From: Octopus sinensis
Lineage: Eukaryota
DNA: 64,000 nt
Assembly (NCBI RefSeq): GCF_006345805.1
Contig: NC_043002.1
Span: 77,004,001 to 77,068,000, forward strand
Direction of reading: 5' to 3'
Shown: one piece after another, positions 441 to 42,210 of the stretch
How the letters are laid out: each line of letters opens with the position of its first letter
Numbering within the stretch: the first letter of the stretch is position 1
Program-made: the position numbers and the translations under genes
Notes under the pieces: generated by a model
Seen by the model: the letters and a program-made list of their open reading frames with translations, nothing else
Databases searched by the model: none
What the model was told of the DNA's origin: nothing

Positions 441-1057
441 CAATCAGAGAAAGTGAGAGGAAATCAAGCATTAATTTCAATGATCTCACTCAGTTATCAT
501 ACTCATTCAGTTTAGTAGAGACTGAAAAACCAAGAGCCATTGCTCAAACTATCGTTACAAAAACCTCTCCAATATGGTTGCTTTTAATTGATTAAACAGA
601 TTTTATAGCTACTCCATTAAGTAATCAGAAGCAATATTTACTCCAGTATTCATTTTAAAAATATGTTAGCAAATAAAAAAGAGAGAAAAATTTCTCCTTG
701 CATTTATGGTCAGCATTTCAATGTATTTTCCACTACTCAGTATTATAGCCATTAACATCTGAAATAAATCATAGCATTTTGATTTTTTTCTCTGTAACTT
801 ATTGTTTTTCTTTTTCTATTAACTAATGTTTGTCCAGCATTTATCCATATAACTTGCTATAAAAAAAAAAGAGGAAAGAACCTGTATTTTGAAAAGCGGG
901 AAAATTAACAAGGTATTTTTTATTTGGCTTAGTAATCGTTAATAAAACAAATTTGGATTTTCTGGCTTAAGTAGATTCTTATGTACCAGAGCAGAGAGGC
1001 ACCCTCATAGAATCAGTCATGCAAACATACCAGATAAAATATGGTAAAATCCAGAAT

Positions 1058-1111
1058 CCAAGGAAACCAGTGATGGCTTGCATTTAGTCAAACCATCACC
1101 AGTTTCCTCGG
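1058..1111 (-). ncRNA. Candidate pre-miRNA-like hairpin (23-bp stem, 8-nt loop)
   Basis: Minus strand CCGAGGAAACTGGTGATGGTTTG-ACTAAATG-CAAGCCATCACTGGTTTCCTTGG pairs at all 23 positions (19 Watson-Crick, 4 G-U); UG at -14/-13 from the stem base; no expression evidence. Confidence 0.4.
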
Positions 1112-1295
1112 TGGCATTTAATACATAGGAGAGTTTGATAAATTCAGTTGTCGTGAGGAGTGAAGAATATACTGTTTCAGACTTGGTCCTTGTCTTTCAT
1201 CATGGAGTTAGGAAGAGAGAGAAACTTGTCATGATCTGTGCCAGCAGTAGTTTTGAAGAGAATGATTGATAGGACAACTTGATAACTTCCCTTAC

Positions 1296-1316
1296 CTCGA
1301 AGCCCTTGCCCTTCAT
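1296..1316 (-). other. Candidate 21-nt microexon (MKGKGFE in phase 0 or DEGQGLR in phase 1)
   Basis: Minus strand tcatattcactttcag|ATGAAGGGCAAGGGCTTCGAG|gtaagg; frame-preserving length; GC-rich relative to flanks. Confidence 0.3.
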
Positions 1317-3244: not shown

Positions 3245-3458
3245 TTCTTTTACTTGTTTCAGTCATTTGACTGCGGCCATGCTGGAGCACCGCCTTTAGT
3301 CGAGCAAATCGACCCCAGGACTTATTCTTTGTAAGCCTAGTACTTATTCTATTGGTCTCTTTTGACGAGCCGCTAAGTTACGGGGATGTAAACACACCAG
3401 CATCGGTTGTCAAGCGATGTTGGGGGGACAAACAATGACACACAAACATACGTACACT

Positions 3459-3490
<32 letters not shown>

Positions 3491-3670
3491 CACATATATA
3501 TATATACGACGGGCTTCTTTCAGTTTCCGTCTACCAAATCCACTCACAAGGCTTTGGTCGGCCCAAGGCTATAGTAGAAGACACTTGCCCAAGGTACCAC
3601 GCAGTGGGACTGAATCCGGAACCATGTGACTGGTAAGCAAGCTACTTACCACACAGCCACTCCTACGCAT
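3245..3670 (-). mobile_element. tRNA-derived SINE family A (internal CA/TA microsatellite)
   Basis: A-box TGGCTGTGTGG and B-box-like GGTTCAGTCCC on the reverse strand; near-identical to more than 10 other copies in the window. Confidence 0.92.
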
Positions 3671-7268: not shown

Positions 7269-7480
7269 AGCAATCTGACAGAATCATTACTACACTGGAC
7301 AGAATGCTCAGTGGCATTTCTTCTGGCTTTTTATATTCTGAGTTCAAATCCTGCCAAGGTCAACTTTGCCTTCCATCCTTTCAGGGACTATCCCAGTTGA
7401 GTACTGGATAGTCGAGTAATTGACATACCTCTCTCCTAAAATTGCTGGTCTTGAGCCAAAATTATTATTATTATTATTAT
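7262..7480 (+). mobile_element. SINE family B
   Basis: TTCTGAGTTCAAATCC B-box, GGTCAACTTTGCCTT core, (ATT)n tail. Confidence 0.85.
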
Positions 7481-7482
7481 TT

Positions 7483-7637
7483 AGGTGCAGGAGTGGCTGT
7501 GTGGCAAGTAGCTTGCTTACCAACCACATGGTTCTAGGTTCAGTCCCACTGCGTGAAACCTTGAGCAAGTGTCTTCTACTACAGCCTCGGGCCAACCAAA
7601 GTGGATTTGGCAGATGGAAACTGAAAGAGGCCTGTCG

Positions 7638-7672
<35 letters not shown>

Positions 7673-7866
7673 CTGTGTTTGTCCCCCCAACATTGCTTGA
7701 CAATCAATGATGGTGTGTTTACGTCCCCGTCATCTAGCGGTTCGGCAAGAGGGACCAATAGAATAAGTACTAGGCTTACAAAGAATAAGTCCTGGGGTCG
7801 ATTTGCTCAACTAAAGGCGGTGCTCCAGCATGGCTGCAGTCACATGACTGAAACAAATAAAAGAAT
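7483..7866 (+). mobile_element. SINE family A, full length
   Basis: AGGTGCAGGAGTGGCTGTGTGG head through GACTGAAACAAATAAAAGAAT tail. Confidence 0.92.
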
Positions 7867-8084: not shown

Positions 8085-8341
8085 GCATATGGCATATGTG
8101 TTTCCCCAGCTGGACGGGACGCCAATCCATTGCAGCATTACTCAAGAAACAGGAAGAAAGTGTGAGAGAAAGTTGGTGTGAAAGAGTACAACAGGGGTTG
8201 CCACCACCCCCTGCTGGAGCCTTGTGGAGCTTTTAGGTGTTTTTGCTCAATAAACACACAAAACACCCAGTCTGGGAATCGAAACCGCGATCCTCCGACC
8301 ACGAGTCCGCTGCCCTAACCACTGGGCCATTGCACCTCCAC
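8085..8341 (-). mobile_element. SINE family D with tRNA-Arg-like head
   Basis: Reverse strand TGGCCCAGTGG (A box) ... GGTTTCGATTCC (B box); shares body with 51400-51621. Confidence 0.85.
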
Positions 8342-9292: not shown

Positions 9293-10270
9293 GTTGTAAT
9301 GACTGATGTTGTAGTTGTGGCAACACTGCTGCAATAATTGTCATTTATTGTTACTAGATGTGTTACCATTTTACTACACTTGTTGTTGTAGCTGTTCGCG
9401 TTATTGTATTGATGCTATTTTAATTGATGTCATTATAATCATTATTTGTTGTTCTACTTAGTGTTGTTACTTATCGTGTTTCAGCAATCAATATTTTTGT
9501 TGTTGCTTCACTCTCCTACTCAATGTCAGTGTTGATCGAAGAAGGCATTCCAGCCATAATTTCCTCAGCGTTTTTAAGAATATCTAGGCCTGCTTACTCA
9601 ATATGTCGTTTGCTTTTTTTTTTTAAAAAAAAAATGGTTGAGTGCGATTTGAGGGAGATTTTGCTACTATTTCTAGTAGGTTTTGCATAGTTGTCAACCT
9701 TATGCAGCCTCTAGTAGGTTAATATTCCTTGTAGATTTTGCATAGAGATTTCCTTATCAGTCTGAAATTTTTGATTTTGCTGATGTCGCTGGCAAATGGT
9801 GATGTCAAACTTGTAGCAGCTGCTATAACTATTTATTGCCATATTTGCAACAACAAAAGAATTGGTACTAAGTATAAATTGTGGTTGTTGTTGTTGTAGT
9901 TATCTCTTACCATAGCCACCAAGACAAAAATTCATTAATATTAATATGGAAGAATCATTTAAATAAATATAATATCTGCTGTCCTGAATACATAATTACA
10001 TTTGAACTCATTTACATATGTAATGATATTGTTGTTGTTTAGCCTCGGGTCAGTTGTGATCAAGCAGACCTGTGATCAAAGGCACTGCCTATGAGATGGA
10101 AGACCAGGGGGTACATTGTAGCTGGATCTGAGAATGTCCTGGGATCTCAGTGAATGTTTGCATATATTAAAAACTAGTATTTGCAGAAGAGAAGGGAGTT
10201 TGAAAGAAACTTTGTACTCCTGCCTGATGAAATCCCCCTCAGGGATCTATTCAAGGACGTTCTAACCATG

Positions 10271-10648
10271 ACTCTTTACTCTTTTACTTGTTTCAGTCAT
10301 TTGACTGTGGCCATGCTGGAGCAGCGCCTTTTAGTCGAGCAAATCGACCCCAGGACTTATTCTTTGTAAGCCTAGTACTTATTCTATCGGTCTCTTTTGC
10401 CGAACCGCTAAGTTACAGGGACGTAAACACACCAGCATCGGTTGTCAAGTAATACTGGTGGGGACAAACACAGACAGCAAACATATAGACACACATACAT
10501 ATATATATATATATATACACATATATACGACGGGCTTCTTTCAGTTTCCGTCTACCAAATCCACTCACAAGGCTTTGGTTGGCCCGAGGCTATAGTAGAA
10601 GACACTTGTCCGAGGTGCCATGCAGTGGGACTGAACCCAGAACCATGT
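10271..10648 (-). mobile_element. SINE family A, head truncated
   Basis: High identity to 3245-3670; lacks the A-box end. Confidence 0.9.
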
Positions 10649-11214
10649 TTGCCATTTAAATCTCACTCATAGTGCAAAATGTTATCCATGTTCTCTACTT
10701 GCTGCCATAGTCTACCTAATTCTTCAAGAACTTTTCTGTTGTCAGTAGTTTGTTGTTCAACAACCAGGTGAAAAATCCAAATCATATATTTATTTATAAA
10801 GATACAAATGAGAGTATTTTTATGTGTGTGAGTGTGTACGTGAGAGTGTGAATACATCTGTGCTTGTGAAAGAGAGTGTGTGTACACTGTTAAGTGGCAG
10901 TAATTAAATTTTCAGCTGAGTCTGAAATGCAGGATCAATTCACAGCTGAGCCTTTTCACTTTATTTTACTTACACCTCATACCTTTGTTTGAAATCATTT
11001 TCAATAACCTGGAATAAGATGTGCTCTACTAAGCTGTCTCTTTTTTTTTTTTGTTTTTTTTTTGTTTTGGAGGTATTTCATGAAGACAAAATCTTCAGCA
11101 GTGGCCAAAGAATTACAGGGCATTTTCACTACATTGTTACCTTGGGTAACTTGTTTACTGATGATACCTTGGGTTAAACAATGCTTTTTGAGTGGAATTT
11201 AGTAGAAGAAAACT

Positions 11215-38468: not shown

Positions 38469-39574
38469 CACTTGTAACATTCTTCTTAAACCCTTCTATA
38501 AGAGATGAAGCTCTGTCTCTTGTATTAATTATTTAATGAGGGCTACCTCACTCAGGGGCACAACTAATCAGTCCATAACCTTTAAATCCATAGCTGTTCT
38601 AGTTTATCTTGTGTGCCTAAAGTTTTGATTCTGTGTCAATTTGTCAGATAATCCCTCTGCACTCTTTATATACCCATTGTTTGCATTGACTACACAGTAT
38701 CATATTCCTGCTTCTCTTTTTCCAGCATACATAAATAGATGTTCTATATAATATGCACACAAACATGTGTACACTTTTTATGCCTACATTCAAAGAAATC
38801 TCATACACACATACCTAATACACATGTGTATACTCATAGAAGCACATACATACACACAACACATATACACACACACATGTGTACATATACAGCATATATG
38901 CACAAACACTATCATTTCCTCACAAGCTGTTATCACACATCCTTTCACAGTCTCAGAGGTTTCAAATTCAGTTTGTTAATTTTCTCAAAGGTTGATATCC
39001 TAATTCTCACAGACTTTCTCACAGTTTAATATATCACCCATATGTACCACAGTCTCTTCTGTTTCTCCCTGCATCACTCTTATTCTATCTTATTGAAATT
39101 TTCCTTCTCTCTCTTTCTCTCCCTCTCTCTCTCACCAATGCCATCCATGCTTCTCTCTTCCATATTTTATGGCTCTCTTATTCTGGTTTATAGAAATTCT
39201 ATTGCCACTTTTCTGCTGTTTTACTTATATACTAAAATATATGATGCACTTAAAATGCTTGCTTTGCTAAAACCTTCAGACCATTATTAATAAAAGAACA
39301 AACTGCTGCAGCCTCTTTGGTGACATTAATATTTGATTATCCAGTGCCTAAGCTACATATAAATCGTGGAATAGACATTCCAAGTTTATAGATTGTATAA
39401 CTAACTTAGTCATAAATTAGTATTAATGTTAAGGATCATGTTAAAATGTTTATAACTTCCATTGATGCATTCAAGCATGCTAATATATAAATATATCGAA
39501 GCATTGTGTGTATATGTGAGTTGTGTGTAACTACTGAGTCATTAAACTACTGGACCAAGTTTTGAAAATATCAG

Positions 39575-41774: not shown

Positions 41775-42210
41775 AGGCATGGCTGTCTGATAAGACGCTT
41801 GCTTTCCAACCACATTCTGGGTTCTGGGTTCTGTTCCACTACATTACACCATGGGCAAGTGTCTTCTGCTATAGCTTCAAGTTGACCAAAGCCTTATGGG
41901 TGGATTTGGTAGATGAAAACTGTAAGAAGCCCGTTGTATATACAACTGTGTGTATGTATATATGCGTGTGTGTGTACACGTATGCATGCTTGCGTGCACG
42001 TATGTGTATGTGTGTCTTTCTCCTCCACCACTCCTTAGAAACTGGTGTTGGTTTGTTTATGTCACCATAACTTAGCAGTTCAGTAATAGAGACCAATAGA
42101 ATAAGTATGAGGCTTAAAAAAAATAAGTACTGTGTTGATTCATTCAGCTAAAAAGTCTTCAGCATAGCCACAATCTGATGAGTGAAACAGATAAAAGATA
42201 AAAGATAAAC
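41775..42210 (+). mobile_element. SINE family A
   Basis: Family motifs; tail GATAAAAGATAAAAGATAA. Confidence 0.85.

What the first reader, a model, noticed from the sequence alone, without database searches (positions are those of the whole stretch)
1058..1111. Strand-specific, fully paired 23-bp hairpin with pre-miRNA geometry
Seen: on the minus strand, two 23-nt arms around an 8-nt loop pair at every position. All four non-Watson-Crick positions are G-U; on the plus strand they would be C-A mismatches. Given four transitions, all falling as G-U on one chosen strand has odds of about 1 in 16, which hints at selection on RNA structure. A loose lower stem (aaat/attt, cca/tgg) and a UG at -14/-13 also occur. 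It lies in unique sequence, about 180 nt downstream of the candidate minus-strand microexon donor. Known: about 55-nt hairpins with 22-23-nt arms and a basal UG are Microprocessor substrates, and coleoid cephalopods have many lineage-specific miRNAs. Inference: a possibly undescribed intronic miRNA or a short ADAR substrate. No CNNC or apical UGU motif is present and I do not recognise the seed.
Basis: partly seen in the sequence, partly recalled or inferred. Interest (0 to 1): 0.7.

Follow-up and report, generated by a model that had tools for sequence, protein, structure and literature searches.

The report
Young palindromic hairpin, unproven microRNA
The 54-base hairpin is real and far too good to be chance, but it looks most like a recently created small DNA palindrome (raw material for a microRNA) and nothing testable here shows that it is a working microRNA.

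Summary
On the minus strand, 1111..1058 folds into 23 uninterrupted pairs (19 Watson-Crick, 4 G-U) around an 8-nt loop: -37.0 kcal/mol, z -10.2. The plus strand gives -23.2. It is the strongest hairpin in the window; the next uninterrupted one outside simple repeats has 13 pairs. About 6e-4 are expected by chance, and it is single-copy in the window.

- The inverted symmetry stops sharply at the arm ends.
- The proposed lower stem is no better than shuffled flanks, so the roughly 35-bp pri-miRNA stem is missing.
- CNNC and apical UGU are absent. Only the basal UG is present.
- Rfam and the held cephalopod miRNA seed-site tables give no match.

The G-U argument is weak. The window is strongly CpG-depleted (o/e 0.25). 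Three of the four wobbles lie at inferred ancestral CpGs. Neutral decay leaves the stem fully paired on a named strand in 4-8% of simulations.

Most likely (about 0.6) this is a recent local inverted duplication, probably a replication template switch, with no shown function. A real miRNA is about 0.1. Small-RNA reads and orthologous sequence, neither reachable here, would decide.

The parts
1089..1111 (-). 5' arm of the hairpin (CCGAGGAAACUGGUGAUGGUUUG), read 1111 to 1089
   Evidence: pairs at all 23 positions with 1058-1080
1081..1088 (-). 8-nt apical loop (ACUAAAUG); contains no UGU or GUG
1058..1080 (-). 3' arm of the hairpin (CAAGCCAUCACUGGUUUCCUUGG)
1112..1130 (-). 5' flank. It holds the proposed loose lower stem (CCA 1114-1112, UAAA 1120-1117) and the UG at -14/-13 (1125-1124).
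   Evidence: The pairing appears in the MFE fold but is no better than shuffled flanks. UG position read.
1035..1057 (-). 3' flank. A 4-nt bulge (AUUC) is followed by UGG 1053-1051 and UUUA, the partner of the proposed lower stem. No CNNC occurs within 30 nt.

Best explanation
The feature is a small, sharp-edged DNA palindrome: two 23-nt inverted copies around an 8-nt spacer, created by one recent local inverted-duplication event. The most likely cause is a replication or repair template switch, which produces perfect base pairing for a whole hairpin in one step.

Since then the palindrome has picked up four transitions. Three fall at what would have been CpG dinucleotides of the perfect ancestor (CCGG in both arms and TCGG in the 3' arm). 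They happen to read as G-U on the minus strand.

If the minus strand is transcribed, the RNA would fold into a very stable hairpin of pre-miRNA size. That makes the locus raw material for a microRNA, a 'proto-miRNA'. There is no evidence that it is cropped by Drosha, diced, loaded into Argonaute, edited, or under selection.

Shown here: the structure, its uniqueness and non-chance nature, its sharp boundaries, the CpG context and the CpG depletion. Inferred: the template-switch origin, the perfect ancestor, its youth, and the lack of function.
For: - The perfect 23-bp stem is far beyond chance, with 5.7e-4 expected per window. It is an extreme outlier in the window, so a mutational event that copies sequence in inverted orientation is required.
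- The symmetry ends abruptly. Flanks of 30-200 nt show no residual inverted similarity (p 0.19-0.86), and flank pairing is not better than shuffled flanks. A single short copying event predicts this; an evolved roughly 35-bp pri-miRNA stem or a decayed long inverted repeat does not.
- All four arm differences are transitions. Under the C-to-T reading the ancestor is CCGAGGAAACCGGTGATGGCTTG / CAAGCCATCACCGGTTTCCTCGG, with four CpGs of which three have decayed. The window has CpG o/e 0.25 and TG/CA 1.33.
- Neutral simulations leave the stem fully paired on a named strand in 4-8% of runs with CpG hypermutability, so selection need not be invoked.
- No target-site duplication flanks the arms (sequence). 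No other copy exists in the window.
- Base rate from PMC10710096: template switches made more than 6,000 miRNA-sized hairpins in primate genic regions, of which 18 are MirGeneDB miRNAs.
Against: - No outgroup sequence was available, so the event, its age and the direction of the four changes are all inferred.
- Four of four differences preserving pairing on one strand is mildly unusual under neutrality (about 0.04-0.08 for a named strand). That strand is also the one carrying a candidate microexon with good splice sites 184 nt upstream, which would make the hairpin sense-intronic. Both points fit selection on an RNA structure.
- The basal UG sits at the position expected for Drosha substrates.
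- Copy number in the whole genome is unknown, so a transposon-derived origin is not excluded.
Confidence: 0.6

Rival explanations
1. It is a genuine, lineage-specific intronic microRNA gene. The minus-strand host transcript is cropped by Drosha at the base of the 23-bp stem. Dicer removes the 8-nt loop. One arm is loaded into Argonaute, probably the 3' arm, whose 5' end (CAAG/UUUG) is the less stably paired.
For: - The hairpin is pre-miRNA sized (54 nt, 23-nt arms) and very stable.
- All mismatches are G-U on the strand that also carries a candidate microexon.
- UG is present at -14/-13.
- An interrupted lower stem of about 11 bp can be drawn.
- Octopuses gained many novel miRNA families, and species-specific ones were deliberately left out of the published set (PMC9699675).
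- Template-switch hairpins in introns are a documented source of new miRNAs (PMC10710096).
Against: - The lower stem is not better than chance, and inverted symmetry stops at the arm ends. The roughly 35-bp stem that Microprocessor measures is therefore not demonstrable.
- CNNC and apical UGU/GUG are absent, and the loop is only 8 nt.
- A stem with no mismatch at all is atypical of established animal miRNAs (my knowledge, not tested here).
- No Rfam hit.
- No candidate seed appears among the held Ovu seed sites.
- The base rate for such hairpins becoming bona fide miRNAs is about 0.3-2%.
- The plus-strand version, with four C-A mismatches, is equally miRNA-like, so pairing alone does not fix the strand.
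Confidence: 0.1
2. It is a functional or at least used RNA duplex of another kind in a minus-strand intron. It could be a short ADAR editing substrate. It could also be a structural element that modulates splicing of the neighbouring candidate 21-nt microexon, for example by positioning or masking the downstream UGCAUG.
For: - A 23-bp uninterrupted duplex is long enough for ADAR binding (established knowledge).
- In octopus most A-to-I editing is in introns and 3'UTRs, where hairpins are enriched (PMC9699675).
- Under the alternative A-to-G reading of the wobbles, two lie in UAG triplets (ancestor CUAG/CUAG), which is the ADAR-preferred context (my knowledge).
- The hairpin lies 184 nt downstream of a candidate microexon donor and 35 nt upstream of a UGCAUG hexamer.
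Against: - There is no transcript, editing or conservation evidence.
- The microexon is only a candidate; a pair of splice sites that good is expected about 0.34 times per window by chance.
- A UGCAUG within 300 nt has roughly a 7% chance expectation.
- The CpG-decay reading explains the wobbles without invoking editing.
Confidence: 0.15
3. It is a remnant of a mobile element: the paired terminal inverted repeats of an internally deleted DNA transposon or MITE, a foldback element, or a fragment related to the abundant SINE. In that case it would be present in many copies elsewhere in the genome.
For: - 27.6% of the window is self-similar repeat.
- One arm matches 17 of 18 bases of a diverged SINE-like copy at 42038-42055.
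- Short hairpins with perfect arms are typical of MITEs (established knowledge).
Against: - No second copy occurs in 64 kb.
- The SINE match does not extend beyond 18 nt, and other SINE copies do not match within 3 mismatches.
- No direct target-site duplication flanks the arms, and the ends do not resemble the termini of the common superfamilies (sequence; my knowledge).
- A degenerate arm pattern found nothing in the viral, metagenome or prokaryote collections, though these collections are not expected to hold the host genome.
Confidence: 0.12

Closest known systems
Template-switch-generated hairpins ('de novo miRNA' raw material; Mönttinen et al. 2023, PMC10710096)
   Same: It is a short inverted copy next to its template with a small spacer. 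Pairing is perfect at birth and the boundaries are sharp. It lies in unique, possibly intronic sequence and is of miRNA size.
   Different: The event itself is not demonstrated, because no ancestral or outgroup sequence was available. The published cases were defined on primate and mouse alignments with hairpin stems of 30-55 bases. This is a single sequence from an unverified, probably cephalopod, genome.
Canonical animal pre-/pri-miRNA (MirGeneDB-type gene)
   Same: It has 23-nt arms, more than 16 paired positions, an 8-nt loop, a total of 54 nt, and a basal UG at -14/-13.
   Different: It has no demonstrable lower stem of about 11 bp, no CNNC and no apical UGU. The stem has no mismatch at all. 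There are no expression data, no conservation data and no family match.
Intronic dsRNA substrates of ADAR in coleoid cephalopods
   Same: It is an uninterrupted duplex in probable intronic sequence of a probable cephalopod genome.
   Different: It is much shorter than the repeat-derived duplexes that are usually hyper-edited. No RNA-DNA differences could be examined.
MITE or foldback transposon remnants
   Same: It has perfect or near-perfect inverted arms with a tiny internal segment.
   Different: It has no target-site duplication, no other copy in the window, and no recognisable transposon termini.

Membership tests
Bona fide animal microRNA (MirGeneDB / Fromm et al. criteria, recalled from memory) | Reads of 20-26 nt from both arms of the hairpin | not testable with these tools
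   No small-RNA data are accessible.
Bona fide animal microRNA (MirGeneDB / Fromm et al. criteria, recalled from memory) | 2-nt 3' offsets (Drosha and Dicer cuts) and homogeneous 5' ends | not testable with these tools
   No small-RNA data are accessible.
Bona fide animal microRNA (MirGeneDB / Fromm et al. criteria, recalled from memory) | At least 16 complementary positions between the arms, in a hairpin of pre-miRNA size | tested here: met
   23 of 23 positions paired, 54 nt, 8-nt loop.
Bona fide animal microRNA (MirGeneDB / Fromm et al. criteria, recalled from memory) | Presence in a second species (the rule used for novel octopus families in PMC9699675) | not testable with these tools
   No cephalopod DNA is reachable. 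ORF look-ups, protein searches and DNA scans gave nothing.
Canonical Microprocessor substrate (pri-miRNA) | Stem of about 35 bp: a lower stem of about 11 bp below the duplex of about 22 bp, with single-stranded flanks | tested here: not met
   Inverted symmetry stops at the 23-bp arms. The energy gain from flank pairing is -5 to -11 kcal/mol against a similar null (p 0.08-0.32). The drawn lower stem is 3+4+4 bp with a 4-nt bulge and two internal loops.
Canonical Microprocessor substrate (pri-miRNA) | Sequence motifs: basal UG, apical UGU/GUG, downstream CNNC | tested here: inconclusive
   UG is present at -14/-13. UGU/GUG is absent. There is no CNNC within 30 nt 3' of the stem. These motifs help processing but are not obligatory, and their use in molluscs was not checked.
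Known RNA families (Rfam 15) | Match to a curated covariance model | tested here: not met
   No match at gathering score in the window. Only chance-level snoRNA/sRNA matches (E of 1 or more) occur in 800-1400.
Template-switch mutation product | The inverted arm is absent from the ancestral or outgroup sequence, and the change is explained better by one inverted copy than by point changes | not testable with these tools
   No outgroup is available. Indirect support: sharp boundaries and perfect pairing apart from four transitions.
MITE or DNA-transposon remnant | Multiple copies, and a target-site duplication flanking the inverted repeats | tested here: not met
   It is single-copy in the window. 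The flanks GCCA / ATTC are not a direct repeat. The genome-wide copy number is not testable here.
ADAR substrate | A-to-G RNA-DNA differences within a duplex | not testable with these tools
   The duplex requirement is met structurally. No RNA data are available.

The most novel reading that the evidence does not exclude
The hairpin is a newly born, species- or genus-restricted microRNA. A template switch created it inside the intron just downstream of a neural-type 21-nt microexon. Selection has kept it fully paired by tolerating only G-U-forming decay of its CpGs. Its cropping might be coupled to inclusion of the microexon.
Probability: 0.08. Interest if true: 0.5.

Novelty: new member of a known kind. 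Interest (0 to 1): 0.2.

Why it matters
If small-RNA data showed precise processing, this locus would be a clean example of how the large cephalopod miRNA repertoire grows. It would show a one-step palindrome in an intron caught early, with its CpG decay still readable. If they do not, it is one of the many neutral short palindromes that genomes generate, and its only value is as a caution: a perfect hairpin with G-U-only mismatches does not by itself indicate selection in a CpG-depleted genome.

Tried and rejected
**Routes to related sequence or annotation that gave nothing**
- Known family: Rfam at gathering score on the whole window and at E up to 10 on 800-1400 gave nothing relevant.
- Literature: 15-mers of both arms in 8.3 million full texts gave 0 hits.
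- Supplements of the octopus miRNA paper PMC9699675: arm 10-12-mers and 12 candidate seed-site 7/8-mers gave 0 hits. A let-7 control showed that these files hold only 8-mer seed sites and are truncated, so the negative is weak.
- Exact look-ups of four window ORFs in the assembly index found none on record.
- Two protein searches used chimeric queries of all non-repeat stop-free translations. One covered 2,161 aa from 1-11.7 kb, including every frame across the hairpin. The other covered 4,937 aa from the rest of the window. Neither gave a hit at E up to 0.001. The host gene, the organism and orthologous loci therefore remain unidentified.
- Scans of the metagenome, viral and prokaryote collections with a degenerate arm pattern gave 0 hits.

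**Ideas considered and dropped**
- SINE origin of the arm: the 17/18 match at 42038-42055 does not extend, and other SINE copies do not match. Rejected as probably chance.
- Longer decayed palindrome or pri-miRNA stem: rejected.
- Mirtron: rejected, because the hairpin ends do not coincide with splice sites (184 nt from the candidate donor).
- A simple exon finder found no convincing exon of 60 nt or more.
- My impression of mariner-like fragments at 55.9-56.7 kb was not confirmed by Pfam.
- ARAGORN found no tRNA genes.

Full report
**1. The observation**

Read on the minus strand, 1111..1058 is CCGAGGAAACUGGUGAUGGUUUG-ACUAAAUG-CAAGCCAUCACUGGUUUCCUUGG. All 23 positions of the two arms pair. 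Nineteen pairs are Watson-Crick and four are G-U, at stem positions 3, 11, 12 and 20 (window 1109/1060, 1101/1068, 1100/1069, 1092/1077). The minimum free energy is -37.0 kcal/mol, with z = -10.2 against dinucleotide shuffles. On the plus strand the same positions are C-A mismatches and the energy is -23.2 kcal/mol (z = -6.1).

From the base composition, about 5.7e-4 stems of 23 contiguous pairs (G-U allowed, loops of 3-15 nt, both strands) are expected in 64 kb. A scan of both strands found no other uninterrupted stem longer than 13 bp outside low-complexity DNA. Among 26,449 non-simple 64-nt windows this one has the lowest energy, -38.1 against a mean of -8.4 (sd 4.1). The arms occur nowhere else in the window. 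The hairpin is therefore real, at the stated coordinates, and not a chance product.

**2.

- The UG at -14/-13 is there (1125-1124).
- There is no CNNC within 30 nt downstream and no UGU/GUG in or next to the loop.
- A 21-nt candidate microexon lies on the same strand at 1316..1296. It has a pyrimidine tract plus CAG acceptor and a GTAAGG donor, and the donor is 184 nt upstream of the hairpin. The donor is among the seven best in the window. However, a pair of sites this good within 3-30 nt is expected about 0.34 times per window, so the exon remains a candidate.
- The 'loose lower stem' does appear in the MFE fold of 1020-1150. When the 23-bp stem is fixed and the flanks are shuffled, though, the extra energy from flank pairing is ordinary: for example -6.7 against -3.8 (sd 1.9) kcal/mol with 20-nt flanks, and p = 0.08-0.32 over flank lengths of 15-40 nt.

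**3. What the anatomy says**

The inverted symmetry is sharp-edged. Aligning the left flank with the reverse complement of the right flank over 30-200 nt gives scores at or below the shuffled expectation (p 0.19-0.86). The object is thus a discrete 23+8+23 palindrome. It is not the core of a longer, decayed inverted repeat, and it is not an extended stem of about 35 bp.

No direct repeat flanks it (GCCA on one side, ATTC on the other). One arm matches 17 of 18 bases of a diverged SINE-like copy at 42038-42055. That similarity does not extend, and the other SINE copies do not share it. I treat it as chance.

**4. The G-U argument**

Each transition in a perfect stem gives G-U on one strand and C-A on the other. 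Four of four on one strand therefore has probability 1/16 for a strand named beforehand and 1/8 for either strand.

Context matters more than this arithmetic. If the wobbles arose by C-to-T changes, the ancestor was CCGAGGAAACCGGTGATGGCTTG / CAAGCCATCACCGGTTTCCTCGG. That ancestor has four CpGs, of which three have decayed to TpG and one (CCGAGG in the 5' arm) survives. The window is strongly CpG-depleted (o/e 0.25, TG and CA 1.33), so CpG transitions are the fastest changes here.

I simulated four substitutions on the perfect ancestor. The stem stayed fully paired on the minus strand in 0.5% of runs with no rate bias. It did so in 4.2% of runs with transitions twice each transversion and CpG x10, and in 8.0% with stronger transition bias. 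The figures are about double for 'either strand'.

This is suggestive at best, and the hairpin was flagged precisely because it is fully paired. The alternative reading (A-to-G, ancestor CUAG/CUAG) cannot be excluded without an outgroup.

**5. Is it a microRNA?**

Features that fit:
- size (54 nt, 23-nt arms)
- stability
- the basal UG
- a possible sense-intronic position

Features that do not fit:
- The stem of about 35 bp that Microprocessor measures is not demonstrable.
- CNNC and apical UGU are missing, and the loop is only 8 nt.
- A stem without a single mismatch is more typical of a newborn palindrome than of an established animal miRNA (my knowledge).
- The plus-strand form, with four C-A mismatches, is still a strong hairpin. 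Pairing alone therefore does not tell which strand, if any, is used.

No Rfam family matches. The arms occur in no searchable paper. None of twelve candidate seed-site 7/8-mers appears in the held supplements of the octopus miRNA study PMC9699675. A let-7 control shows that those files list only 8-mer sites and are truncated, so this is weak negative evidence. That study also required presence in two octopus species, so species-specific loci would not be listed in any case.

The base rate is low. In primates, template switches created more than 6,000 miRNA-sized hairpins in genic regions, about 100 of which are in miRBase and 18 in MirGeneDB (PMC10710096). I put a bona fide miRNA at about 0.1.

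**6. Related sequences**

I could not reach any.
- Exact look-ups of four window ORFs were not on record.
- Two protein searches used chimeric queries covering 7,100 aa of non-repeat, stop-free translation, including every frame across the hairpin. They returned nothing.
- A degenerate arm pattern found nothing in the metagenome, viral or prokaryote collections.

The negative protein searches also indicate that the window has no recognisable coding exon of 45 aa or more.

**7. Best explanation**

The best explanation is a recent local inverted duplication, most likely a replication template switch. That mechanism generates perfect pairing for a whole hairpin in one event. Neutral decay dominated by CpG transitions followed. 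The locus is potential raw material for a miRNA, but no function is shown (confidence about 0.6).

Rivals:
- a genuine young miRNA (about 0.1)
- another use of the duplex, such as an ADAR substrate or a splicing element for the neighbouring candidate microexon, with a UGCAUG 35 nt downstream at 1023..1018 (about 0.15)
- a transposon remnant (about 0.12)

**8. Novelty and score**

The hairpin is undescribed as far as I could check, but it belongs to a known and common kind. A specialist would not be surprised by it, and it opens no long-standing question. Interest is 0.2.

The most novel reading not excluded is a newborn miRNA coupled to a microexon, with pairing kept by selection. I give that probability 0.08 and interest 0.5 if true.

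Noticed in passing
window 1296-1316 (minus strand): Candidate 21-nt microexon ATGAAGGGCAAGGGCTTCGAG (62% GC in a 34% GC window) with a pyrimidine tract plus CAG acceptor and a GTAAGG donor. The donor is among the 7 best of both strands. A pair this good is expected about 0.34 times per window. Two of its reading frames are open (MKGKGFE, or xEGQGLR). A UGC lies about 25 nt upstream of the acceptor.
   Followed up: partly
window 1018-1023 (minus strand): A UGCAUG hexamer (the Rbfox-type motif) lies 35 nt downstream of the hairpin and about 270 nt downstream of the candidate microexon donor. The chance expectation within 300 nt is roughly 7%.
   Followed up: no
whole window: Strong CpG depletion (o/e 0.25) with TG/CA excess (1.33), 34% GC, many microsatellites, and 27.6% self-similar repeat. 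The repeat is dominated by one SINE-like family, for example at 1400-2000, 3270-3640, 7350-7800 and 10230-10670.
   Followed up: partly
window 42038-42055 (+): A diverged SINE-like copy contains GAAACTGGTGTTGGTTTG, which matches 17 of 18 bases of the hairpin's 5' arm. The similarity does not extend and other SINE copies lack it. It is probably chance.
   Followed up: yes
whole window: About 7,100 aa of non-repeat stop-free translations gave no protein match at E up to 0.001. No tRNA (ARAGORN) and no Rfam family at gathering score were found. The window appears to hold no recognisable coding exon of 45 aa or more and no known RNA gene.
   Followed up: yes
window 38647-38814 (minus strand): A stop-free stretch has a weak PHD-finger-like match (PF00628, E 6.8e-4, 20.1 bits, below the 24-bit cutoff). 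It may be a fragment of a mobile-element protein.
   Followed up: partly
window 8265-8328 (minus strand): A GC-rich, cloverleaf-like stable fold (-30.4 kcal/mol) lies in a repeat that also occurs near 51.2-51.7 kb. It looks tRNA-derived, but ARAGORN and Rfam do not call it.
   Followed up: partly
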